Virus record (IMG/VR): IMGVR_UViG_3300034073_003340
Coordinates: 186,001-250,000 of that record
Reading direction: 5' to 3' (one strand)
DNA length: 64,000 nucleotides
In this document: in pieces, positions 10,632 through 54,382 of the stretch
Layout of the letters: each line of letters starts with the position of its first letter
How positions within the stretch are numbered: the stretch's first letter is position 1
Program-made: the position numbers and the translations under genes
The notes under the pieces: model-generated
The model's database searches: none
Told to the model about the DNA's origin: nothing
Seen by the model: the letters and a program-made list of their open reading frames with translations, nothing else

Positions 10632-11789
10632 TTAGTTGCGGAGGATTACTACCAAGTCGCCTGACCAAGAGGGAGGGTTATCGCCTACCACTGCCAAGTG
10701 ATCTCCATAAGCTATTACTCTATCGCCTGCCACTGGGATACTAATTGTGCCCAATAGATCACCAACCGCCCAAGTAATTGTTCCAATCACCTGACCGTTC
10801 TTCTCAATGTCGCGGGTTTGACTCACTGTGGCCGCTTGAGTTGCCTTTACCCTAGAGTTGCTTACGCTGATAGTAAAGGGTTGGAGGGCTGGGTTGAGGG
10901 CAATAGAGCTTGCGCTCGCGGGGCCTTGTCCCACATAGCCTACCGCGATACTTGAAGTGGAAGCTTTGGCGTCTAGTGCCCCTTGTAGACCCGTTACGTC
11001 CTGGATCGTGTGGGTGTGGATAGCCGGAGCCTTGCCATCAAGAGCGGTTTGGAGATTGGTTACCTGAGAGATCGCAATGGAGCCTGTGGCATCTAGTTTG
11101 AGATCCAAGGCCGCTTGTGTCGCAATGCTGATTGGTTTCTGGGCATCACTGGTATTATTGACGTTTGTGATATTGAGAAAACCTTTGACGTCCACATCTG
11201 TGAGTTCGCTGGCCTGACCTGCCCCTGGACTAGTTTTGCCCAAGATGCGGGGTCCTGCGCTCAACTGGATATCAGCAGCCACGTGACTGTGAGTGGCATT
11301 GGCTTTGAGGTCCAGAGCCGTCTGTGTGGCAGTGCTGATTGGCTTCTGGGTATCGCTAGTATTATCCACATTGCCAAGACCAACCGCTGCCTTGTTCAGT
11401 GTTTGGAAAGTTTTATCGCCTCTCCAATACTGTTGGGCCGTTCCTGCCACAATGGCATCTTCCTTGCCAGCCAGGGCCGCTACTGCCGCATTACTCAGGG
11501 GTTTCAGAGCGTCACTGGTATTATTGACGTTTTCCAGTTCCAAAAAGGTTTTGGCCTGAGTGGAGGTCAAGTTTTGAATAGGGGCATCAGTGGAGCCAGT
11601 GGATCTACCCAATAGACCTGCGCCGGGACTTGTTAGACCGCTGGTAGTAATATTACCTTGATCCACCTTGTTGTCTTGATTCAAGTAAAGTTCATCAAAG
11701 TTATTGTTTACTTTAATGAACGCATCGCGCAGGCCCTCGCCGTCACCAGCATTGGCCGCGCTACCAATATTGATAGTTTGCTTTGCCAT
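10632..11789 (-). CDS. Baseplate/tail-fibre protein with T4 gp9/gp10-like N-terminus and tail repeats
   Basis: MAKQTINIGSAANAGDGEGLRDAFIKVNNNFDELY; three NV(N/D)NTSD..KP.S.A..AL repeats; HTHTIQDVTGLQGALDAKA phage-tail repeats. Confidence 0.8.
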   Translation of the reverse strand: MAKQTINIGSAANAGDGEGLRDAFIKVNNNFDELYLNQDNKVDQGNITTSGLTSPGAGLLGRSTGSTDAPIQNLTSTQAKTFLELENVNNTSDALKPLSNAAVAALAGKEDAIVAGTAQQYWRGDKTFQTLNKAAVGLGNVDNTSDTQKPISTATQTALDLKANATHSHVAADIQLSAGPRILGKTSPGAGQASELTDVDVKGFLNITNVNNTSDAQKPISIATQAALDLKLDATGSIAISQVTNLQTALDGKAPAIHTHTIQDVTGLQGALDAKASTSSIAVGYVGQGPASASSIALNPALQPFTISVSNSRVKATQAATVSQTRDIEKNGQVIGTITWAVGDLLGTISIPVAGDRVIAYGDHLAVVGDNPPSWSGDLVVILRN

Positions 11790-11812
11790 TTTATTCTCCT
11801 CGCCCTGGGGCC

Positions 11813-14800
11813 TTAACTGATACTTCCGTCTGTTAGAGCAAGATTGCTCGAGACATTGATCTGGTTGTTATCTGCGGTGTTGGTTACTACACTGCTCTGG
11901 TTGTCATCTAAATCACCTGACAAGTCCCAAATGTTAGCTGCCACTTTGGTCAAAGTAACATTGGAAAATCTCGTGCGAGTAAAACGACTTGTTGGCGTAT
12001 TGATGATCACGCTGGGTCCTGGCACGATTTCTGTTTGACCGGAACCAATCTGAGTGATGTGAATCTGGACACCAATATTTAATTGAACCGTTGAGTTATT
12101 GGGAACCACTACTTGATTGGGTCCAGTAAAAGACCTACGAATATAGGATCCAGCATCACTGGTTTGGAGAGTATAGGAAGCCGTGGTAACTGGAGTTACT
12201 TTCATACCAGCAGCATCAACTTGCTTTTGACCTACCCAAGTTCTAGTTCTACTAAAGTAGCGGAACAAGTAAAAGGTCAGACCATTTGGCACAATATTGG
12301 GGGCCGTGCTGGAGATCCAAGTAATAGGTCCACCCTGCGTTACTTGAAAGTTGACTTGACGATTACCAACTGAATCTTGCTTTACAGCAATCAGGAGTTC
12401 ACTATAAAGTTCACCGCTAGTATTCAGCGGTCCAGGAGCATAGGAGGTTGGCTCTGGTGTCTTGATCGTCAGAGTAGCTGAGCCGGTCAAGTTTACCAAG
12501 AAAGTATTGCCTGATTTTGGATCAATGACACCGTCTGGTACAACTGAGTTGTCTTCAGTATAGCGGAGAAGAATACCACTGGCATTGTAGTGACCAACAA
12601 AGTTTCCTTCGTCTGGCTGGACATCATAGGCCAAACGTGGTCCACTGATAAAGTCCTGATCACTGCGTCTCTTTACACGAGTAAAGGACCATTCACAGTT
12701 TCCTTCTTTGTAGATTTTGCTGAACTCACCATTGTAGTAAAAGTTTACGTTGGTAAGTTCCAATCTATTTTCTGCTCCGCCAGTATTGGCATCCGCAATA
12801 CTGTAGAGACCCACAGTATAGTCTCGGATGGTATCAGGCTGTTGAACGGTGACCTGAACCCAGGGAGTTTTGAGGCTTTCACCTGCGTTATTGGGATCAT
12901 CAATTGGATTACCCTGTGGATCAAGTAATAGGGTCTCGACGTTGTTTCCTTCGTCGTCCTGATTATTCAATAGAGTAACACCGGGATCATCTTCAAACGC
13001 GTCATCTCCCGTAGTGGTTAGAAACTTGGGTCGTCCACCTTCCCAAAGGGGAAGAGATGGGTTATTGATATTCACGCTGTAGTTTTCTGGAATAATGGAT
13101 CCAACATTTTCCATTATCAAAACACCACCATTGTGTTCAATACCTTTGAGTAATGGGGCACCAGAAACCAAAGTAAAGCTTTCGGGACTCAACTGAAGAC
13201 CCGTCCAACCATTTTCAGGAAGACCGCAGTTTTGGAAAACAACACGATTTCCATCCGCAATAGTCGAGTTGTCAATTTTACCCTGAATAGTACAGTTGAA
13301 GAAATTGACATCACCGCCAAGCTGACCATTCAAAGACATAACGGTCAAATCACTCAGAGGACCAGGTCCTCTCAAAAAGGAACAGTCCTTGAAAGTCGCT
13401 TTGCCAACACCACCTACAATCGCAAAAGTAGGCTGAAATATTGAACTTGGTTGATCACTAGTATCAATGGTGATTTTGCTCATGAGCAGTGAATCAACAT
13501 TGAATAGTATTTGGACGTTTCCTTTGATTACTGAATTTGTGGAACCAAAGAAACCCTCAATGGCAAGATTTCTCTTGTTTTGAATATCAACATTTTCCTG
13601 ATATGTTCCACCCAGAAGCATTATGGTATAGGTGGTCAGCAAATCTCCATTGGGGATTTCACTCAACGCGCGATTTATGGTCAGGTAGGGAGAGTTCAGC
13701 GACCCGTTGCCCGTGGTATCATTGCCATTCTTACCAACAAAAATCGTGTTTTGGATCGTCTGAAAGAACTGCTGAACCGAAGACCATACTAGTGTATTAC
13801 TTGGACCCTGTGTTAGAAACTGGCCAGTGGTGCCAGCGGTGGACGGGAAAAGCAGTCCATTTAGGGTCAAAGAGGGCGATTGTAGGGCCACCGCTGGTGC
13901 TTGTAGAGCCAAGCTGGTTCCTGTGCCACCATCTAGTGTGATGCCCGTCTGTGAAACCCTGATAGAGCTGGAAGGAGCAATCGCATGGCTTTCAATGAAG
14001 ACACCATTATTACCAGAAGTGGTAATTGTAAAACCCTGAACGTCCAGATCTCCACCCAGTTGTGGAGTTTCATCAACCACAATTTCAATCAAATTGTTGC
14101 GCAACTGAGCAACTGTCAATCGCTTTGGTTGATTATCACCAGAGGACAAGAAGATGAACTGGTCAGTGTTGGTGACAATTGGCTCGGCGTCCAATTTGCC
14201 AATATCCAGATTGACAGTTGGCGCTTCACCTGTTCCAGTGACCGTTATACCAATTCCACCAGTTACTCCGCTGACACTTCCTGCACCAACGGGTTGCCAG
14301 GATAGATTGGATCCTTGTGCCACCAGGGCAAATGCTCCAGCGCCGCCAGGAGGTGAAAACGCAATTGACTGATTGTTGGAATCACCCACAATAATGGATC
14401 CCTGATTCAGGGTGTGACTCAAAAGACCATAAGGAATTATTTTGGTTCCAGTGGCAATCAATCGACCATTTTGATCAAAGGCAAAGGTTGGAAACACCAA
14501 GTTGCCAGAACCGGTACCAATATTGGTTCCTTGGATTGGAACAGTGATTCCACTCTGATGATCAATATACCAGTCAATAGAGTGTTGAATAGCTTCATGG
14601 GCAGTCAAGCGACCCTTGGCATCAAATGAAAGTCGGAAGTCACCAAGATCACTGTTATAGGTTACTGGGCCCTGGATTGTGTTTGATAGAGTGAAATTTA
14701 TTTCCAATGTTGGATCAGCAGCGCCAACGACTACCGCATTGTCAAATCTATCACTCTGACCCGCGGCATCTCCAACAAAACTCAAACGAGTATTTTGGAT

Positions 14801-14941
14801 TTTCGTCAGTTCATCACTGGCTTGGAACAGCGCCTGTTGAGTCGCATTGGTATTGTCCCTAAACCCCTGTGATGAATTATTGACACCAGGGGTTGGGAAC
14901 GTGACATTCAGGCTATTGGCTCTATTGCGAACGTCGCTCAT
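11813..14941 (-). CDS. Large tail fibre/tailspike-like structural protein
   Basis: N-terminal FPTPGVNNSSQGFRDN coiled segment; IFVGKNGNDTTGNGSLNSPYLTINRAL beta-helix entry motif; C-terminal YTLQTSDAG...IGVQIHITQIGSGQ...LTKVAANIWDLSGDL fibre domain. Confidence 0.75.
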   Translation of the reverse strand: MSDVRNRANSLNVTFPTPGVNNSSQGFRDNTNATQQALFQASDELTKIQNTRLSFVGDAAGQSDRFDNAVVVGAADPTLEINFTLSNTIQGPVTYNSDLGDFRLSFDAKGRLTAHEAIQHSIDWYIDHQSGITVPIQGTNIGTGSGNLVFPTFAFDQNGRLIATGTKIIPYGLLSHTLNQGSIIVGDSNNQSIAFSPPGGAGAFALVAQGSNLSWQPVGAGSVSGVTGGIGITVTGTGEAPTVNLDIGKLDAEPIVTNTDQFIFLSSGDNQPKRLTVAQLRNNLIEIVVDETPQLGGDLDVQGFTITTSGNNGVFIESHAIAPSSSIRVSQTGITLDGGTGTSLALQAPAVALQSPSLTLNGLLFPSTAGTTGQFLTQGPSNTLVWSSVQQFFQTIQNTIFVGKNGNDTTGNGSLNSPYLTINRALSEIPNGDLLTTYTIMLLGGTYQENVDIQNKRNLAIEGFFGSTNSVIKGNVQILFNVDSLLMSKITIDTSDQPSSIFQPTFAIVGGVGKATFKDCSFLRGPGPLSDLTVMSLNGQLGGDVNFFNCTIQGKIDNSTIADGNRVVFQNCGLPENGWTGLQLSPESFTLVSGAPLLKGIEHNGGVLIMENVGSIIPENYSVNINNPSLPLWEGGRPKFLTTTGDDAFEDDPGVTLLNNQDDEGNNVETLLLDPQGNPIDDPNNAGESLKTPWVQVTVQQPDTIRDYTVGLYSIADANTGGAENRLELTNVNFYYNGEFSKIYKEGNCEWSFTRVKRRSDQDFISGPRLAYDVQPDEGNFVGHYNASGILLRYTEDNSVVPDGVIDPKSGNTFLVNLTGSATLTIKTPEPTSYAPGPLNTSGELYSELLIAVKQDSVGNRQVNFQVTQGGPITWISSTAPNIVPNGLTFYLFRYFSRTRTWVGQKQVDAAGMKVTPVTTASYTLQTSDAGSYIRRSFTGPNQVVVPNNSTVQLNIGVQIHITQIGSGQTEIVPGPSVIINTPTSRFTRTRFSNVTLTKVAANIWDLSGDLDDNQSSVVTNTADNNQINVSSNLALTDGSIS

Positions 14942-22977: not shown

Positions 22978-23232
22978 TTAATCGTCGAACTCACTAGGTT
23001 TAGCTTTTTGGAGCACGGGTTCTCCTGCCTTGAGGATCTTCCGTGCTTTTGTGAGTGAACAGTCCTCGCCGCACAAGGTACAGTTGGGTTCTGTGAAGTC
23101 AGCTTTACCACTGTCGATCTCTGCGACTTGATCCCTGAGACTCTCAAAGACCATTAGGGCATCGTCAGTGCCAGCTAGCGTATCAGAGCAGATGGGGCAT
23201 TGGCGCTTGAATCGTGTGTCTTTTACACTCAT
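22978..23232 (-). CDS. Small Zn-finger-like protein
   Basis: CPIC...CTLC pairs. Confidence 0.7.
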   Translation of the reverse strand: MSVKDTRFKRQCPICSDTLAGTDDALMVFESLRDQVAEIDSGKADFTEPNCTLCGEDCSLTKARKILKAGEPVLQKAKPSEFDD

Positions 23233-25016
23233 CAGACTTCCTTCCAACCCTGCCCTTCGAGGTGAGCCTTGACTTCGTCCCAAGTGCCTTCGCTGCTGTA
23301 GCTGAAGCCAGTCTCAGGATCCTCGCCCTTGCGCTTGAAGACATCGTGCGTGATGTCCTCAACATTCCACTCGCCGCCCCACGTAGCCATGAGCTCCTCA
23401 AGCATCGCACTGGGCAGGTCGATGTTGTTGATCAGCTTGCCGTCACGGTCCAGATAGCCCATGAGGATGCGGATACCAGTGAAATCTCGGCGCACGAATT
23501 GGAAACCCAGGCCAGTAATCTGCGCATCGCGCGGGCGGTAGCGGTCATACCAGTGAATATCCAAGGGAAGGTTACTCTTGTTGAGCTCGTAGGTTTCCCA
23601 TACCTCGCGACAGAAGTCAGCCCACTGATCACCACTGTCAGCCTTGATGCGCGCTTCGGCATTGCCCGGAGGTGGAGCCGGAGGGGCCACAGCAGCCGGT
23701 GGAGCCGGAAGCGGGGCAAAGCTGCCCGCACGAGCATTCACCGCCGCAGGACCCATCATAGGGGCTGGGTGACCTGGGTTATGAGGCGGAAAGGAAGGAA
23801 GTGGAGTGGGTTGCGGAACCGGCAGATCATACGGTGGAGGATACGATGCCTCGTCATTGATGATTTCCAGATTCTCTCCTTCATCCTCGTCGTCGATATC
23901 CAGCATTTCGCAAAGTTCTGCGTGGAGATCTTCATCCGTGTAGGTAAAGTAATCGGGCAGGACCGTAGTGCCGTCGTCGAAATATTCATACAGAAGCCAG
24001 ATTGCGTGGCTGCGTTCAAGCGTGACCCAGATGCCGGCCTGAAGCTCTCGCTTGATCTTTTTGTCATCTTCCCATGTGGGATCACACTGGTCGAGCCCCT
24101 TCAATCCAGCGGCTCGTTGCGTTATGAATGCGGCCTGAACCGCAGGTTGGAGATTGGCCAATTCGGGCCATTGGGTGGCCATCAGAGGCAAAGCTGCCTG
24201 CATACCGGGAGCATTGAAGATGCCGCTGGGCGGAAGTGCAGGGACGTTGATTGCGTTCATGTTGGGGATGGGACCCACGGGGGCAACTGGCAGCATTCCA
24301 GTAGGTGTGCCGGGCGGCATGGGCACACCGTTGCCAGGCATCGGAATACCCAGCATGGCGCCGATCTGGCTCATGAGATTGCCCACTGGAGGTGTGGAAG
24401 CCGCTGCGGCTGCGCTCAGGGCACCAGGAGCAGGCTTCGCAACGCCGGGAGGATTCCAACTGGAATCCAGGATCGGTGGAAGAGGTGGATTGACGGGAGG
24501 GGTCGGCGTCTGCGGCGCCGGTCCGTTGCTGGTGTCATTGAGGAAGTCGCTGAGTGACTGGTCGTGCTTGAAACCATATTTGGCCAGCGCGATGTGAACC
24601 TTCAGAACGTTGTCGTAGGGTGACACGAAATCGTTTTCTTGTGCTTCATCGGCGAGGTCGTCGGGCAGACAGTGGAAGAATTGTATGATCCACTGCTGAT
24701 GCTGGTCGAAGACATAACCAGTGCGGCGCCAGCGATCCTGTGGTTCGAACACATAGCTGATGCCAGTGGTAAGACCGTTCATCGTGTCACCGTGCTCGCA
24801 GATGCCATAGACCCATTGATCACGTTCATAGACGCCGCAGTCTTCGTCGTCACCGATTGTATAAACGGTTCGATTCAGCTTGCTGTTGAAGAACTCCCTG
24901 ACATTCTCGCCATTGAGGGCAAACTTCTGAACTCGCTTCCAGTCTTTTTCTGTGGTCGGGACATTGGAAGTGTTGAAGTAGTGAACGATGCGTTCCTTGA
25001 TTTCTGCGCTACTCAT
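23232..25016 (-). CDS. Large hypothetical protein with two Pro-rich linkers
   Basis: Long ORF with GC-rich codons; GGAGATCGAT RBS before ATG 25016. Confidence 0.85.
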   Translation of the reverse strand: MSSAEIKERIVHYFNTSNVPTTEKDWKRVQKFALNGENVREFFNSKLNRTVYTIGDDEDCGVYERDQWVYGICEHGDTMNGLTTGISYVFEPQDRWRRTGYVFDQHQQWIIQFFHCLPDDLADEAQENDFVSPYDNVLKVHIALAKYGFKHDQSLSDFLNDTSNGPAPQTPTPPVNPPLPPILDSSWNPPGVAKPAPGALSAAAAASTPPVGNLMSQIGAMLGIPMPGNGVPMPPGTPTGMLPVAPVGPIPNMNAINVPALPPSGIFNAPGMQAALPLMATQWPELANLQPAVQAAFITQRAAGLKGLDQCDPTWEDDKKIKRELQAGIWVTLERSHAIWLLYEYFDDGTTVLPDYFTYTDEDLHAELCEMLDIDDEDEGENLEIINDEASYPPPYDLPVPQPTPLPSFPPHNPGHPAPMMGPAAVNARAGSFAPLPAPPAAVAPPAPPPGNAEARIKADSGDQWADFCREVWETYELNKSNLPLDIHWYDRYRPRDAQITGLGFQFVRRDFTGIRILMGYLDRDGKLINNIDLPSAMLEELMATWGGEWNVEDITHDVFKRKGEDPETGFSYSSEGTWDEVKAHLEGQGWKEV

Positions 25017-25075
25017 ATCGATCTCCATGAGGATTTGAGTCTTGTGTAGCACCTTGTCCAAAAAGGACAAGGTAA

Positions 25076-26500: not shown

Positions 26501-26812
26501 TTATTGAATGTCCGCTAGCATTTGCTCCACCAGACTTTTGGCTTTTTCCAGTTGATGTTTGCGGTTATCAGAACCCATTTGACCGATCTTCGCATCAGGA
26601 TTCACAAAAGCCCCAATCACCATGTTGTTAGCGACCTTGCCCATTTCAGCTGGCAAATCAAATGCCAGCAGCAGACTTGAAATGGCCTCCATCTGTTGAC
26701 TACACATATCAACCAATTCCGATCTCGGGATCACAACGGCTGAATCGTTGGTTTCGAGGAATTCGTCATTTACCTGAGATTCATCAAGTAAAATCAAAAC
26801 AGGGTTCGTCAT
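26501..26812 (-). CDS. Hypothetical protein
   Basis: 103 aa, coupled to upstream gene. Confidence 0.7.
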   Translation of the reverse strand: MTNPVLILLDESQVNDEFLETNDSAVVIPRSELVDMCSQQMEAISSLLLAFDLPAEMGKVANNMVIGAFVNPDAKIGQMGSDNRKHQLEKAKSLVEQMLADIQ

Positions 26813-27351
26813 TACAAATCCTTCACCAGATCCAAATATGTTTGTTCATCTACGCCTAAGGCTTTTAACCAAGAGTTAAAGTAAAAGTCAAGCTCTGCTG
26901 AACGAGGATGAGATCCTTTGTGATAAATCAGAAAGTCTTTTCGATTTTGAACTTTGTCAGCTATCAACATCTGATTCACTGGATCCAGAGGGCTGGTGGC
27001 TATTGGTCGATCCAATAGCAAAGTCCTATAGTCGTTGTGTGGCCCACCCTGCCACGACTCAATGACAATATCAGATAGGCTGCGGTTGGCCATATTGCGA
27101 TATTCCAAAGCATAGAGGACCACTAATTGATTGAGATCAGCGCATTGGAAAAAATTTGCCTTTAAATCAGCGTCCGCTTGAAAGATTGGATGGACTGCGT
27201 AAGCTTCCATTGTTACCTCGTCGGCACCAATCCTGCGCAGGATCTTAATACCTTGATTGATGTGGTCAATCAAGGAAACGCCAGAGCGCTTGGTTCGTCG
27301 GTCACCATAATGACGAACGATCGCTTGATACCCAGGTGTTTTCTCGATCAT
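26812..27351 (-). CDS. Degenerate HD-domain (SpoT/Mesh1 hydrolase-like) protein
   Basis: R..RSG...IDH...G..IL..IG.D..T..AY..HP...MLIADKVQN; HD replaced by HP. Confidence 0.5.
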   Translation of the reverse strand: MIEKTPGYQAIVRHYGDRRTKRSGVSLIDHINQGIKILRRIGADEVTMEAYAVHPIFQADADLKANFFQCADLNQLVVLYALEYRNMANRSLSDIVIESWQGGPHNDYRTLLLDRPIATSPLDPVNQMLIADKVQNRKDFLIYHKGSHPRSAELDFYFNSWLKALGVDEQTYLDLVKDL

Positions 27352-27665
27352 GGTTTGGGTCCCGTGACTGCCTGAGAAAGGTCAGGTGTAAGCTTGATAG
27401 GTATGATCTTGATGTCATCGTAAGGGATAGGGCTGATCGTCCTATCACTGTGTTGGTCGTCCACTATCTCGATCTCGTTGACGAGAGGATATTTTGCTGC
27501 CTCTTTGATCCAATTTTTGATCACCTTGGCAGCATTTTTCTCACTAGCATAAAGAGCCGGATCATGATGGATGTCTTGAAAATAACGATGGCCACCTGAT
27601 GTGCAGGGATAGTGAAGACCCGTCTCAGGATCCCTATAATAAATGGCGAACTGGGTCATTGTCAT
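27348..27665 (-). CDS. Hypothetical protein
   Basis: 105 aa, overlapping starts and stops with neighbours. Confidence 0.7.
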   Translation of the reverse strand: MTMTQFAIYYRDPETGLHYPCTSGGHRYFQDIHHDPALYASEKNAAKVIKNWIKEAAKYPLVNEIEIVDDQHSDRTISPIPYDDIKIIPIKLTPDLSQAVTGPKP

Positions 27666-28915
27666 CGTAAAGCCTCCTGAATTCTCAAAAATACCTCTTC
27701 ATTGCCCAAAAGGGTCAAGCAGTCCACAATAGGCGGGCTTGTCTTACTCCCTGTGAGGGCCATTCGCAGAGGGGCTACCACTTTGCCCAACTTGAGGTTG
27801 AGGTTCTCTGCGACCCCATTTAGGACTTCCATGATGTGATCATGGTCCCACTCAACGTGCTTGATGGCATTGTTTACCAACGACAGAACCATCTTCTCGT
27901 TATCGTTCAGAGGTTCTGAGAGGATAATGGGACTTTTAGCCCAGAGAAACATTGTTCCCTCGATCAAAGCATTCATATCAGAAGAACGTTCTTTTAGAGC
28001 GTCAACGGCCCCCAGGAGTTTATCTTGGGGCGGTGTTGGAATGCCGCGCCCTTGAAGACCCGGAAGAATCTTTTCAGCCAAATACTGTGAAGACGACTTC
28101 CTGATATAGTGACCGTTGAGATTCATCAACTTTTTCTTATCAAGCCTCGCGGGATTTCGACCAACGTCCTTGATGTCAAACCACTCAACGGCCTGCTCCA
28201 TGGAGAAAATTTCGTCGTTGCCGTGACCCCAACCCAATCGAGCAAGATAATTGAGCATGGCTTCGGACAGAATACCCATTTCCTGGTAGTCTGTTACCGC
28301 TGCGGCACCGGTGCGCTTTGAGAGCTTTTTGCCATTCTCATCCAGGATCAGGGGAATGTGGCCATAAGCTGGAATAGGCCAACCCATGGCCCGGTAGATG
28401 CTCATCTGCCGAAAGGCATTGTTGAGGTGATCATCGCCGCGAATCACATGAGTGACGCCCATATCGTGATCGTCGACCACCACAGCTAGCATATAGGTTG
28501 GCGTGCCGTCCTTGCGGAGAATCACAAAGTCGTCGATATCCTGGGGCCATGTGACTTCGCCCTGAACCAGATCGTTTATCGTCTGTGCGCCCTTGGTCCC
28601 GCGAATCCTGACTGCCCCATCATCATAATAGGCCAGCATGTCGTCCACGAGTTGCTTGGCCACTTCAACATGGCGAGCAGCGCGCTCACTCTGCAGGACG
28701 ATCTCCCCGTCATGATCCAGCCCCAGCCACTTCATACCATCGTAGATGGCCTGGACAGCCTCGGGAGTGTTGCGCTCCTTGTCGGTATCCTCGATGCGGA
28801 GGAGGAACTGACCTCCTGTATGGCGCGCATAGAGCCAGTTAAAGAGAGCAGTGCGGGCACCACCGATATGGAGGTAGCCCGTAGGCGATGGAGCAAATCG
28901 TGTTACAATAGTCAT
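27662..28915 (-). CDS. gltX: Glutamyl-tRNA synthetase
   Basis: TRFAPSPTGYLHIGGARTALFNWL, LRIEDTD, PTYMLAVVVDDHDMGVTHVIRGDDHLNN, KLSKR, C-terminal anticodon-binding domain. Confidence 0.95.
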   Translation of the reverse strand: MTIVTRFAPSPTGYLHIGGARTALFNWLYARHTGGQFLLRIEDTDKERNTPEAVQAIYDGMKWLGLDHDGEIVLQSERAARHVEVAKQLVDDMLAYYDDGAVRIRGTKGAQTINDLVQGEVTWPQDIDDFVILRKDGTPTYMLAVVVDDHDMGVTHVIRGDDHLNNAFRQMSIYRAMGWPIPAYGHIPLILDENGKKLSKRTGAAAVTDYQEMGILSEAMLNYLARLGWGHGNDEIFSMEQAVEWFDIKDVGRNPARLDKKKLMNLNGHYIRKSSSQYLAEKILPGLQGRGIPTPPQDKLLGAVDALKERSSDMNALIEGTMFLWAKSPIILSEPLNDNEKMVLSLVNNAIKHVEWDHDHIMEVLNGVAENLNLKLGKVVAPLRMALTGSKTSPPIVDCLTLLGNEEVFLRIQEALR

Positions 28916-28967
28916 AGGGCCACTCTGCATTCAAAGTGGGTCCTTGTCTACCGCTTTGTGGATCGCG

Positions 28968-29724: not shown

Positions 29725-30000
29725 TTAAAGGGAGCGAGCTTCCTGGAATGTCATCTCATCCACTAGGATGATATCAGCGTCTGTTTCAATCCAGGCCCGA
29801 TCGCCGCACTGAAGCTGTGATCCGTTATATACCATTTTACTTGGCCCTTGGATCTCAACTTCTCGGGCATAACGGACTTTGCCATTTACCTTTATGGTGT
29901 AGACAGGTCTGTTGCCGCCATCTTTGGCGTTCATCGCAATATGCTGCCGGTTTACATGAATGATCTTAGGCACTTGGAATCGCCTTTGGACGACCGTCAT
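29725..30000 (-). CDS. Conserved-type phage hypothetical protein
   Basis: KIIHVNRQHI..N...PV.T.K...YAREVEIQGPS..VY...L.CG.RAWIET; start uncertain. Confidence 0.75.
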   Translation of the reverse strand: MTVVQRRFQVPKIIHVNRQHIAMNAKDGGNRPVYTIKVNGKVRYAREVEIQGPSKMVYNGSQLQCGDRAWIETDADIILVDEMTFQEARSL

Positions 30001-30373
30001 CGCCAATATGAACGAACACATACATGGCTTCGCAGACTTTGGTCTCAACCCCTGTACAGCCCGCGAGCGCATAGGTACACACCATGACGCTCATGCTAGT
30101 GGTACCCTCACGCTTGATATCAGCGTAAATGACCACTTCGTCACCAACCTTCACAGGTGCGAGGAACTTGAAGCCCTCCACCGCAACCGTTACAGTTCTG
30201 CCACCTGCTCGTCGCTTTGTAACTGCGCCTGCTGCCAAGTCCATTTGACTCATGAGCCAGCCGCCGAAAATATCACCATCTGGGTTGGTGTCGTTGGGCA
30301 TGGCAGTAAGGATGCGGACGGGCTTGCGGCCCTCATTGATTGATGCTGTCATATGACCATGTAGAGGTATCAT
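29966..30373 (-). CDS. yciA: Acyl-CoA thioesterase (hotdog fold, YciA-like)
   Basis: AMPNDTNPDGDIFGGWLMSQMDLAAG...VTVAV..FKFLAPVKVGD...GTTSM. Confidence 0.9.
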   Translation of the reverse strand: MIPLHGHMTASINEGRKPVRILTAMPNDTNPDGDIFGGWLMSQMDLAAGAVTKRRAGGRTVTVAVEGFKFLAPVKVGDEVVIYADIKREGTTSMSVMVCTYALAGCTGVETKVCEAMYVFVHIGDDGRPKAIPSA

Positions 30374-53266: not shown

Positions 53267-54382
53267 TTACACCAGTTCGAAAACTTCTCCGGTTTCCAGG
53301 TCTTCACACATGATGATGAACTTGTCGACGATTTCCTCGGCAACCTTGGTCACGGCAGCTTCAACAATTGCGTCCACCTCGTCATCGCTTACAAAAGCGC
53401 CATGGACCCTGCGAACCGTTGAACCATTGCTGACCAGCATATCACCCCAGCCCAGCAGGTTCTGCGCACCGCCCTGACCCAGTGCCGTGCGGCTGTCGAT
53501 CTCGCTGCTGACGCGGAAGCAAATACGCGCAGGGAAGTTGGACTTGATAACACCGGTTACAACGTCCACAGAGGGCCGCTGAGTAGCCATAACAACATGG
53601 ATGCCCGCTGCCCGAGCCTTTTGCGCAAGGCGCTGTACGAGCCCTTCCAGTGTTTTTCCACCAGTCTGCATGAGATCAGCAAACTCGTCAATGAAGACCA
53701 CAATATAGGGCAATTCGTTTCCGGCTTCCTTGTAGGCCTTGATATTGCGAACGCGGGCGTCAGCGAGCAGTCGGTAACGCCGCTCCATTTCCTCAACCAT
53801 ATCCTCGAGGGCACGGATGGATTCACGCGGGTCGGTGATAACCGGCTGGACCAAATGAGGAATGCCATTGTAGATGGACAGTTCCAACATCTTTGGGTCG
53901 ATCATGAGGAACTTACATTCATCAGCTGACAAAGCTGCCATGAGGCTGATGATCATCGCGTTGATACCAACGCTTTTGCCTGAGCCAGTTGTGCCACTGA
54001 CCAATACGTGGGGCATGGTTGCGAGGTCGGTGACGACCACTTCACCCATAACGTCCAGCCCGAGAGCAATGGGCAAAGCCGCAGTGGTGGTCTTGAACTC
54101 CTCGCTGGTCAGAACCTCGTTGAGGAGTATGGTCTTGCGCTGCTCATTGGGAATTTCAACAGCCAGTGTGGGGCTACCAGGCATCACGTTGATCTGGATG
54201 CTCGCAACACCAAGCAGGCGCGCCACGTCCTCGTTGAGCTTCATGATCTGCGAAGCACGAGTTCCAGCGGGAATTTCGATTTCGTAAACGCTGACCAGAG
54301 GTCCTTGCTTGGAACCAATAACACGAACACGATGTCCGAATTCGTCCAGGGCGCGTTCCAGTGCGGTAGCAAAGTTACTCAA
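53267..54382 (-). CDS. ftsK: FtsK/SpoIIIE motor domain only (no TM, no gamma)
   Basis: PHVLVSGTTGSGKS, MIDPKMLELSIY, IDEFADLM, AQKARAAGIH..ATQRPSVDV.TG.IK.N, GAQNLLG.GDML; TTG start. Confidence 0.9.
   Translation of the reverse strand: MSNFATALERALDEFGHRVRVIGSKQGPLVSVYEIEIPAGTRASQIMKLNEDVARLLGVASIQINVMPGSPTLAVEIPNEQRKTILLNEVLTSEEFKTTTAALPIALGLDVMGEVVVTDLATMPHVLVSGTTGSGKSVGINAMIISLMAALSADECKFLMIDPKMLELSIYNGIPHLVQPVITDPRESIRALEDMVEEMERRYRLLADARVRNIKAYKEAGNELPYIVVFIDEFADLMQTGGKTLEGLVQRLAQKARAAGIHVVMATQRPSVDVVTGVIKSNFPARICFRVSSEIDSRTALGQGGAQNLLGWGDMLVSNGSTVRRVHGAFVSDDEVDAIVEAAVTKVAEEIVDKFIIMCEDLETGEVFELV

What the first reader, a model, noticed from the sequence alone, without database searches (positions are those of the whole stretch)
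27662..28915. Phage-encoded GluRS with a streamlined acceptor-stem insertion
Seen: a full-length GluRS with HIGG, KLSKR and the anticodon domain, but the segment between AY and the (V)IR strand is only YDDGA. From memory, alphaproteobacterial GltX has roughly 35-45 more residues there, in the Zn/acceptor-binding insertion. Established: aaRS genes are uncommon in phages, and HipA kinases inactivate GltX at the KLSKR serine, which is retained here. Inference: a replacement or decoy synthetase against translation-arrest defence, or one with altered tRNA specificity (for example tRNA-Gln or phage tRNAs).
Basis: partly seen in the sequence, partly recalled or inferred. Interest (0 to 1): 0.6.

Follow-up and report, generated by a model that had tools for sequence, protein, structure and literature searches.

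The report
Huge-phage GluRS lacking zinc-binding subdomain
A 436-kb phage encodes its own glutamyl-tRNA synthetase in which the roughly 45-residue zinc-binding, acceptor-arm subdomain is replaced by a tight hairpin. The same kind of deletion is already known in a few bacterial enzymes, so this is most likely a working, trimmed-down synthetase and not a new kind of anti-defence device.

Summary
Window 27662-28915 (minus strand) encodes a 417-aa bacterial-type GluRS. It has HIGG, KLSKR and the anticodon-binding domain. [quoted passage not shown]

The genome is a complete 435,856-bp phage with terminal repeats. It has 59 tRNAs, including three tRNA-Glu and two tRNA-Gln.

All 80 closest cellular relatives are alphaproteobacterial and keep the pZBD, so the deletion is not a host-clade trait. 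It is typical of one huge-phage GluRS clade: 50 of 57 sequences are reduced, as either a 3-residue turn or a ~13-residue loop. Full-length relatives occupy the same syntenic locus in related phages.

pZBD-deleted GluRSs are already described in seven bacteria. One solved GluRS, 8jpv from a Methylacidiphilum species (a genus on that list), is the best two-way structural match.

Catalytic motifs are conserved, and the gene descends from the canonical GluRS paralogue. The same genome carries a ValRS without its editing domain and a ThrRS without its N-terminal editing domains.

Best reading: an active tRNA-Glu-charging enzyme that has lost a dispensable accessory module. The HipA-decoy and tRNA-Gln ideas have no support here.

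The parts
27662..28915 (-). GluRS coding sequence (417 aa from M6, plus stop). An alternative upstream ATG at 28930 would give 422 aa.
   Evidence: the start is as in P0002 and in the homologue consensus
28127..28912 (-). Catalytic (Rossmann plus acceptor-binding) domain, Pfam tRNA-synt_1c, matched in two stretches that flank the deletion
28859..28870 (-). HIGH-type motif H-I-G-G (residues 21-24)
   Evidence: at least 90% conserved in the 27-sequence phage-clade alignment
28604..28633 (-). [quoted passage not shown] About 40-45 residues (two helices and the Cys/His motif) are missing between them.
   Evidence: pZBD definition from PMC4381286
28313..28327 (-). KMSKS-type loop K-L-S-K-R (residues 202-206). 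The serine is the residue that HipA phosphorylates in E. coli GltX.
   Evidence: HipA target Ser239 from PMC8262856
27668..28033 (-). Anticodon-binding domain (Pfam Anticodon_2), including the invariant Arg315
29966..30373 (-). Upstream syntenic neighbour: hotdog-fold 4HBT thioesterase, 78-90% identical in related phages. No functional link to GluRS was shown.
26812..27351 (-). Downstream syntenic neighbour of 179 aa, phrog_21276, function unknown. It follows GluRS in six related phage loci.
27348..27665 (-). 105-aa ORF whose start overlaps the GluRS stop by 4 bases (same transcription unit inferred); no family match

Best explanation
The gene encodes an active, canonical-type (GluRS1-like) glutamyl-tRNA synthetase of a huge phage. 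During infection it adds glutamylation capacity for tRNA-Glu, both the phage's own three tRNA-Glu genes and probably the host's. It is part of a phage translation module of 59 tRNAs and several synthetases.

The missing segment is the pZBD. In bacteria this accessory subdomain touches A73/C74 of the tRNA and, in the transamidosome, docks GatB. In a phage enzyme that charges only tRNA-Glu and has no GatCAB partner of its own, the subdomain is dispensable. It was lost within one huge-phage GluRS lineage and replaced by a beta-hairpin.

The reduced catalytic module is now combined with different anticodon-binding domains in different phages.

Shown: the gene's identity, the deletion, its distribution, the conserved motifs and the fold. 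Inferred: enzymatic activity, tRNA-Glu specificity, and the reason for the loss.
For: (1) Identity. gltX_bact is well above its cut-off, while all GluQRS, GlnRS and archaeal models fall below theirs. All top Foldseek matches are GluRS, TM 0.8-0.9.

(2) Constraint. Twenty-seven clade members at a mean column identity of 60% keep about 100 invariant columns. These include E47, Y146, R164, H168 and K202/L203/K205/R206; S204 is nearly invariant. The RFAPSPTG and HIGG stretches are at least 90% conserved.

(3) Fold. The deletion site folds as a confident hairpin. The best two-way structural match, and the only solved GluRS that aligns in one piece, is 8jpv from Methylacidiphilum fumariolicum. M. 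infernorum, of the same genus, is on the published list of natural, functional pZBD-deleted GluRSs.

(4) Published rationale. The pZBD contacts GatB, and its deletion correlates with a redundant indirect Gln pathway. The phage has one GluRS-family gene and no GatB.

(5) Ancestry. It descends from the canonical alphaproteobacterial paralogue. That paralogue scores 426 bits against E. coli GluRS and 354 bits against H. pylori GluRS1 over its full length. The second paralogue scores 189 bits against H. pylori GluRS1, over the catalytic domain only.

(6) Substrates are encoded in the genome: tRNA-Glu UUC x2 and CUC.

(7) The same genome trims other synthetases: ValRS without CP1 editing and without the C-terminal domain, and ThrRS without N1/N2. 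The mini-ValRS is a large conserved family.

(8) Orthologous locus. The same flanking genes surround short, intermediate and full-length forms in related phages.
Against: No activity or specificity data exist for any member of this clade.

In E. coli the pZBD matters for positioning the acceptor arm and for glutamate binding, so loss could change kinetics or tRNA preference.

One published pZBD-deleted case (M. infernorum) still needs the indirect pathway, so the GatCAB rationale is not strict.

The host is unknown. If it lacks GlnRS, the phage tRNA-Gln genes (U1-A72) need a non-discriminating GluRS from somewhere.

Arg315, probably the C36-reading Arg358 of T. thermophilus (mapping from numbering, not verified), is invariant in cellular relatives too, and the literature says it does not predict discrimination.

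'Streamlining' is a description, not a demonstrated selective cause.
Confidence: 0.68

Rival explanations
1. Anti-defence replacement or decoy. The phage GluRS keeps translation going, or soaks up kinase, when a host HipA-type kinase phosphorylates host GltX as an abortive-infection response. Loss of the pZBD would help it escape or attract the kinase.
For: HipA phosphorylates the conserved serine of GltX. HipA systems that act on GltX exist in Alphaproteobacteria (Caulobacter, PMC7029023, abstract seen). Hip kinases have been proposed, not shown, to act in abortive infection. Any second GluRS copy would raise the amount of target.
Against: The target serine is kept in 120 of 121 homologues because it lies in the catalytic KMSKS loop. 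There is no escape substitution, so the phage enzyme should be as vulnerable as the host's. No Hip-related or known anti-defence gene lies beside it. Full-length and deleted forms sit at the same locus in sister phages. ValRS, ThrRS and CysRS are also carried, which fits general translation support better than a Glu-specific counter-measure.
Confidence: 0.06
2. Altered tRNA specificity. Without the acceptor-arm subdomain the enzyme has become either a GluRS2-like tRNA-Gln glutamylating enzyme or a partner restricted to the phage's own tRNA-Glu (an orthogonal pair).
For: The pZBD hydrogen-bonds A73 and C74 of tRNA-Glu. The phage encodes tRNA-Gln UUG and CUG with U1-A72, and tRNA-Glu with G1-U72 or G2-U71 wobble pairs in the acceptor stem. 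The phage has no GlnRS.
Against: The gene descends from the canonical paralogue, not from the divergent second GluRS. The phage has no GatB to convert Glu-tRNA-Gln. The published comparison found no systematic tRNA-Glu differences between bacteria with and without a pZBD. Arg315 is invariant, although this is weak evidence.
Confidence: 0.13
3. Adaptive insulation. The pZBD was removed under selection so that the phage enzyme cannot be drawn into the host GatCAB transamidosome, or to free it from zinc dependence. On this view the loss is not neutral trimming.
For: In the T. maritima transamidosome GluRS contacts GatCAB through the pZBD. The full-length forms inside the phage clade shown in the alignments have Asp or Tyr where the cellular forms have the first Cys-x-Cys motif; one, P0036, keeps a single Cys. 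The reduced catalytic module appears beside several different C-terminal domains, as if it had spread.
Against: Seven full-length forms persist in the clade at the same locus. Other huge-phage GluRS lineages keep the pZBD. No test of selection was possible.
Confidence: 0.1
4. Inactive relic, or a non-translational use such as GluQRS-like modification of tRNA-Asp.
For: GluQRS models match the catalytic half. One of the two T. maritima GluRS paralogues is reported inactive in the literature.
Against: All GluQRS models score below their cut-offs and the anticodon-binding domain is present. Conservation is strong across 57 sequences down to 54% identity.
Confidence: 0.03

Closest known systems
pZBD-deleted bacterial GluRS (group V of Chongdar et al. 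2015, PMC4381286; a solved GluRS from the same genus as one listed case is 8jpv, Methylacidiphilum fumariolicum)
   Same: The subdomain between strands E3 and E4 is missing and only the two capping strands remain. The rest of the five-domain GluRS is intact. 8jpv is the best two-way structural match (TM 0.90/0.87) and the only solved GluRS that aligns in one stretch.
   Different: Independent origin: this clade branches from alphaproteobacterial GluRS, none of whose best 80 members has the deletion. The carrier is a virus. The remnant is at the bottom of the published 10-17 residue range; 8jpv is 13 residues longer across residues 62-169. Intermediate (~13-residue loop) and full-length forms coexist in the same clade.
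Canonical alphaproteobacterial GluRS (the GluRS1-type paralogue, e.g. Sphingobium boeckii, L110:1042-2484)
   Same: 52-55% identity, the same motifs and the same anticodon-binding domain. These are the nearest cellular relatives.
   Different: The cellular enzymes keep a pZBD of about 45 residues that begins with the A-Y-R-C-Y motif. They live in genomes with a second GluRS and a GluQRS.
Synthetases of huge phages (Al-Shayeb et al. 2020, PMC7162821)
   Same: [quoted passage not shown] GluRS is the example tree in that paper.
   Different: Neither that paper's main text nor my literature searches describe loss of the pZBD or of editing domains in phage synthetases. Other huge-phage GluRS lineages in IMG/VR keep the pZBD.
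GluQRS (YadB)
   Same: Shares the catalytic half; the models match at E 1e-50 to 1e-67.
   Different: GluQRS has no anticodon-binding domain and usually keeps a Zn motif. Here the anticodon-binding domain is present and every GluQRS model scores below its cut-off.

Membership tests
Bacterial glutamate--tRNA ligase (TIGR00464 gltX_bact) | Whole-protein score above the curated cut-off | tested here: met
   445.7 bits against a cut-off of 289.95
Bacterial glutamate--tRNA ligase (TIGR00464 gltX_bact) | Class I signature motifs HIGH and KMSKS in the Rossmann fold | tested here: met
   HIGG at residues 21-24 and KLSKR at 202-206, conserved in homologues
Bacterial glutamate--tRNA ligase (TIGR00464 gltX_bact) | All-helical bacterial-type anticodon-binding domain | tested here: met
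   Pfam Anticodon_2, E 6.7e-22, residues 300-421; helices in the model
Bacterial glutamate--tRNA ligase (TIGR00464 gltX_bact) | tRNA-dependent glutamylation of tRNA-Glu | not testable with these tools
   Needs an enzyme assay
pZBD-deleted GluRS (group V, PMC4381286) | pZBD reduced to 10-17 residues, with only strands E3 and E4 left | tested here: met
   Residues 100-109: strands 100-103 and 106-109 with a D-D-G turn
pZBD-deleted GluRS (group V, PMC4381286) | Occurs where the indirect (GatCAB) route does not depend on this enzyme | tested here: inconclusive
   The phage has no GatB and no GlnRS. The host is unknown. The nearest bacteria have two GluRS paralogues.
GluRS2 (tRNA-Gln-specific paralogue) | Groups with the divergent second paralogue, which has a mismatched C-terminal domain | tested here: not met
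   52-55% identity to the canonical paralogue against 31-36% to the second one; PDB score profiles
GluQRS (YadB) | Catalytic domain only, with no anticodon-binding domain; score above the model cut-off | tested here: not met
   The anticodon-binding domain is present. The best GluQRS model scores 228 bits against a cut-off of 276.7.
Huge-phage translation module | Complete phage genome over 200 kb with many tRNAs and several synthetases | tested here: met
   435,856 bp, terminal repeats, CheckV 100%, 59 tRNAs; GluRS, ValRS, ThrRS, CysRS and fragments

The most novel reading that the evidence does not exclude
A lineage of huge phages, probably infecting Sphingomonas-like Alphaproteobacteria, carries a coordinated set of minimised synthetases: GluRS without the pZBD, ValRS without the CP1 editing domain and the C-terminal tRNA-binding domain, and ThrRS without N-terminal editing. 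Together with the phage's own tRNAs, these would form a translation sub-system cut off from host partners and regulators (GatCAB, possibly Hip kinases) and free of proofreading. On this reading the pZBD loss is one adaptive step in that programme and has spread among phages by recombination of the catalytic module.
Probability: 0.15. Interest if true: 0.7.

Novelty: new member of a known kind. Interest (0 to 1): 0.4.

Why it matters
The clade is a natural deletion series of the GluRS zinc-binding subdomain: full length, a ~13-residue loop, and a 3-residue turn. All three sit in closely related genes at one syntenic locus.

That makes an old question directly testable: is the pZBD there for tRNA-Glu or for GatCAB docking? 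Compare sister enzymes that differ mainly in this module.

It also shows that phage-borne synthetases can be more reduced than any close cellular relative. With the editing-less ValRS and ThrRS in the same genome, it raises the question of whether huge phages run a lower-fidelity or host-insulated branch of translation.

Compact natural synthetase/tRNA sets are also of practical interest as scaffolds for genetic-code engineering.

For the finding as stated, a phage GluRS as an anti-HipA device, nothing here adds weight.

Tried and rejected
- Megablast of 10 kb around the gene against GenBank phages: no match.
- tblastn against the same collection: only distant GluRS at 39% identity or less, many in records that look like bacterial contamination.
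- Rfam on the window: nothing.
- Pfam and PHROGs on ten neighbours: only a 4HBT thioesterase and unnamed phrogs, so no functional context.
- Promoter and terminator scan of 25-31 kb: not clearly above shuffles.
- Arg315 as a marker of discrimination: invariant in all 120 sequences that cover it, cellular ones included, and reported as non-predictive, so dropped.
- TAG recoding, suggested by two tRNA(CUA): long ORFs barely gain when TAG is read through, and 47 of 416 long ORFs end in TAG, so the standard code was kept throughout.
- Glu codon or residue excess as a reason to carry GluRS: Glu is 6.6% of residues, which is unremarkable.
- 'Many independent deletions' as read from the whole-length tree (13 changes; reduced forms as one clade rejected, p 5e-5). 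I no longer take this at face value because the two domains disagree. The C-terminal domain rejects one clade (p 2e-58). The catalytic domain does not (p 0.67), but it cannot reject the rival pairings either. The number of losses therefore stays open.
- Exact look-up of the Sphingomonas mini-ValRS contig: not on record.
- Complex prediction (HipA with GluRS) was not run because the report does not claim binding.
- The reads tools were not used.

Full report
**What is there**

Window 27662-28930 (minus strand) is an open frame of 422 codons.

The protein matches Pfam tRNA-synt_1c and Anticodon_2. It scores 445.7 bits on NCBIfam gltX_bact against a cut-off of 290. Every GluQRS, GlnRS and archaeal GluRS model stays below its cut-off.

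All family and structure matches break at the same point. Profile positions ~104-142 are skipped. Solved GluRSs align in two pieces with 40-60 residues unmatched. In an alignment of 121 homologues the stretch spanning the site is 41 residues here and 78-81 in alphaproteobacterial enzymes.

[quoted passage not shown] It is defined in T. thermophilus GluRS as residues 101-150: two helices capped by strands E3 and E4. It hydrogen-bonds A73 and C74 of tRNA-Glu (PMC4381286).

An AlphaFold model built on 27 clade members is confident overall (pLDDT 88, pTM 0.83). At this site it shows strands 100-103 and 106-109 joined by a two-residue turn, with pLDDT 96-97.

**Where it sits**

The window is part of a single 435,856-bp record. 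IMG/VR classes it as a virus with direct terminal repeats, and CheckV gives 100% completeness. The ends overlap by 127 bp.

ARAGORN finds 59 tRNA genes, mostly in one array at 304-326 kb of the genome. They include tRNA-Glu UUC (two copies) and CUC, and tRNA-Gln UUG and CUG. The window itself has tail-fibre genes and many small ORFs without family.

This is a huge phage of the kind described by Al-Shayeb et al. 2020. Such phages carry up to 67 tRNAs and 15 synthetases, and GluRS is that paper's example tree. So a phage GluRS is not unusual in this size class.

**How the deletion is distributed**

The word search returned a tight group of 415-428-aa proteins at 54-80% identity. They lie on contigs of up to several hundred kb. 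Cellular GluRSs of 466 aa or more (typically 466-484) follow at about 52% identity.

Three states exist at the site:
- the three-residue turn (35 sequences);
- a loop of about 13 residues (15 sequences);
- a full-length pZBD (7 sequences within the clade). Those shown in the alignments have Asp or Tyr where the cellular forms have the first Cys-x-Cys motif; one, P0036, keeps a single Cys.

The clade of 57 is separated from the cellular sequences with 99% support.

Its members lie on IMG/VR contigs of 119-465 kb and on a 481-kb metagenome scaffold with the same gene neighbourhood. One short form is labelled as a gammaproteobacterial MAG protein in NCBI. It lies on an IMG/VR viral contig rich in translation genes.

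Six related phage loci share the same flanking genes: a 143-aa ORF, a 4HBT thioesterase, GluRS, a 179-aa phrog_21276 protein and a 612-aa protein. They carry short (L005), intermediate (L006, L008) or full-length (L007, L009, L014) forms. So this is one orthologous locus with a variable module.

The best 80 relatives among 185,579 species genomes are all Alphaproteobacteria, at 52% identity or less and with matches of 1356-1419 bases. None has the deletion. Both GluRS paralogues of Sphingobium boeckii keep a pZBD. More distant huge-phage GluRS lineages keep it too.

The deletion is standard only within this phage clade.

**One loss or many**

On a whole-length tree, with the pZBD columns removed, the three states are interspersed: 13 changes. 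Holding all reduced forms together is rejected (p 5e-5).

The two halves of the protein tell different stories.

- Identity flips between segments. P0019 (short) is 87% identical to the window protein in residues 106-200 but 50% in the last 120 residues. Against P0034 (full length) the figures are 75% and 82%.
- The C-terminal domain tree needs 15 changes and rejects a single reduced clade (p 2e-58).
- The catalytic-domain tree puts the full-length forms at the base and 49 of 50 reduced forms in one group. The tree constrained to a single reduced clade is even slightly better than the free quick search (p 0.67).
- All reduced forms also share a derived flank, R-I-R-G-I-K-G with one residue fewer. 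The ancestral form, R-L-K-A-P-R-E-G, is kept by most full-length phage forms and by cellular ones.

My reading is one loss, or very few, in the catalytic module, followed by recombination with different anticodon-binding domains.

Two caveats apply. The catalytic domain alone cannot reject the rival pairings. Residues next to the deletion could converge.

Independent histories of the two GluRS halves are already proposed for bacterial GluRS2 (PMC3927822).

**What is already known about such deletions**

Chongdar et al. 2015 surveyed 212 bacterial GluRSs. They found seven with the pZBD deleted to 10-17 residues, with only E3 and E4 left. The seven are Acholeplasma, two phytoplasmas, Methylacidiphilum, Akkermansia, Phycisphaera and Neorickettsia GluRS1.

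They found no systematic tRNA-Glu differences between the groups. They noted that in the T. maritima transamidosome GluRS touches GatCAB through the pZBD. They proposed that the subdomain's core role is GatB docking, so it can be lost where the indirect glutamine pathway does not depend on that enzyme.

A GluRS from the related species Methylacidiphilum fumariolicum has since been solved (8jpv). It is the only solved GluRS that aligns to the phage protein in one stretch. It is also the best match by TM-score normalised both ways, 0.90/0.87. It is still 13 residues longer across the region.

The phage enzyme is therefore an independent, somewhat more extreme member of a described class.

**How it most likely works**

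The catalytic apparatus is under strong constraint. Among 27 clade members at 60% mean column identity, about 100 columns are invariant. They include E47, Y146, R164, H168 and K202/L203/K205/R206; S204 is nearly invariant. The RFAPSPTG and HIGG stretches are at least 90% conserved. The correspondence of these residues to the T. thermophilus glutamate- and ATP-binding residues is from my own knowledge of that structure.

The nearest bacteria have two GluRS paralogues plus a GluQRS. The phage gene is 52-55% identical to the canonical paralogue. That paralogue scores 426 bits on E. coli GluRS and 354 on H. pylori GluRS1 over its full length. The phage gene is only 31-36% identical to the divergent paralogue, whose C-terminal domain does not match.

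The phage has no second GluRS-family gene and no GatB. By descent and by context the enzyme should charge tRNA-Glu.

Loss of a GatB-docking and acceptor-arm module fits an enzyme that has no transamidosome role. That step is inference.

**Supporting context from the same genome**

- The ValRS is 463 aa. It aligns to T. thermophilus ValRS 40-169 and 334-694 of 862. It therefore lacks the CP1 editing domain and the C-terminal domain while keeping HMGH and KMSKS.
- The ThrRS is 398 aa and equals E. coli ThrRS 240-615 of 642, so it lacks the N-terminal TGS and editing domains.
- CysRS is full length.
- The mini-ValRS is not an accident. A family of 430-520-aa relatives, down to 45% identity, lies on contigs of 240-580 kb.

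Trimming of accessory modules thus looks like a general habit of these phages. This weakens any Glu-specific explanation of the pZBD loss.

HipA does phosphorylate the KMSKS-loop serine of GltX, and Hip kinases have been suggested, not shown, to act in abortive infection. But the serine is retained in 120 of 121 homologues because it is catalytic. No escape change is seen, and no related gene is nearby. Sister phages with and without the deletion share the locus.

I give the decoy or replacement idea about 6%. A changed tRNA specificity cannot be excluded from sequence and gets about 13%.

**Verdict**

This is a real and correctly described feature. It is a new, viral and independently arisen member of the known class of pZBD-deleted GluRSs, set in a known kind of genome.

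Its value is as a natural deletion series and as one sign of a wider minimisation of phage synthetases. It does not support an anti-defence role.

Noticed in passing
outside the window: genome 124,127-125,518 (L001:1128-2519, minus strand): ValRS of only 463 aa. It aligns to T. thermophilus ValRS 40-169 and 334-694 of 862, so the CP1 editing domain and the C-terminal tRNA-binding domain are absent while HMGH and KMSKS are kept. A large family of 430-520-aa relatives lies on contigs of 240-580 kb. I found no description of this in the literature searched.
   Followed up: partly
outside the window: genome about 305.8-307.0 kb (L003:1348-2544, minus strand): ThrRS of 398 aa that equals E. coli ThrRS residues 240-615 of 642: catalytic plus anticodon domains only, with no TGS or editing domains.
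   Followed up: partly
outside the window: L002:3792-5141 (-), L002:1422-2240 (-), L004:1009-1461 (-): Full-length CysRS (449 aa). A 272-aa GlyRS-like piece. A 150-aa HisRS/HisZ-like fragment lying inside the tRNA array. No class II Asp/Asn/Lys-type synthetase and no Trp/Tyr-type synthetase was found.
   Followed up: partly
outside the window: genome 99,130-99,204 and 293,258-293,333 (both complement): Two tRNAs with anticodon CUA (amber-suppressor-like; ARAGORN calls them Pyl). ORF statistics give no sign that TAG is recoded: 47 of 416 long ORFs end in TAG, and read-through adds almost no long ORFs.
   Followed up: partly
window 29966-30373 (-) and 26812-27351 (-): A 4HBT hotdog thioesterase, 78-90% identical across related phages and so better conserved than GluRS itself, and a 179-aa phrog_21276 protein flank GluRS in six related phage loci. 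Any functional link is unknown.
   Followed up: partly
window 23232-25070 (-): A 612-aa protein with a long proline-rich, low-complexity middle. It has no family match but is conserved (38-64% identity) downstream of GluRS in related phages.
   Followed up: no
proteins P0038-P0046 (homologues, not in the window): Nine 387-394-aa homologues of the intermediate type, from different sources, start about 30 residues late and so lack the RFAPSPTG and HIGG stretches as called. Their near-identical relative P0031 (426 aa) has them. This is probably a start-codon or gene-calling issue, but I did not check it.
   Followed up: no
protein P0178 / P0242 (not in the window): A mini-ValRS 55% identical to the phage's is annotated in the isolate assembly Sphingomonas sp. 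3-13AW, on a 581,572-bp contig (WP_422513522.1). This may be a huge phage or megaplasmid carried by a cultured strain, and it hints at the host range of these phages. An exact look-up of the contig failed.
   Followed up: partly
window 10632-14941 (-) and 53267-54382 (-): Tail-fibre and minor-tail-like proteins (385 and 1042 aa) and an FtsK/SpoIIIE-like ATPase (371 aa). The first 20 kb of the window is 42-46% G+C; most of the window from about 22 kb on is 46-53%.
   Followed up: no
L026/L010 (IMG/VR contig of 144,978 bp; relatives of 455-465 kb): A second huge-phage lineage carries the short GluRS catalytic module with a very different C-terminal domain: 81% identity in residues 106-200 but 31% in the last 120. 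There the gene sits among a full-length 851-aa class I synthetase, a class I LysRS, GreA, GroES, methionine aminopeptidase and QueD. NCBI labels the protein as from a gammaproteobacterial MAG.
   Followed up: partly
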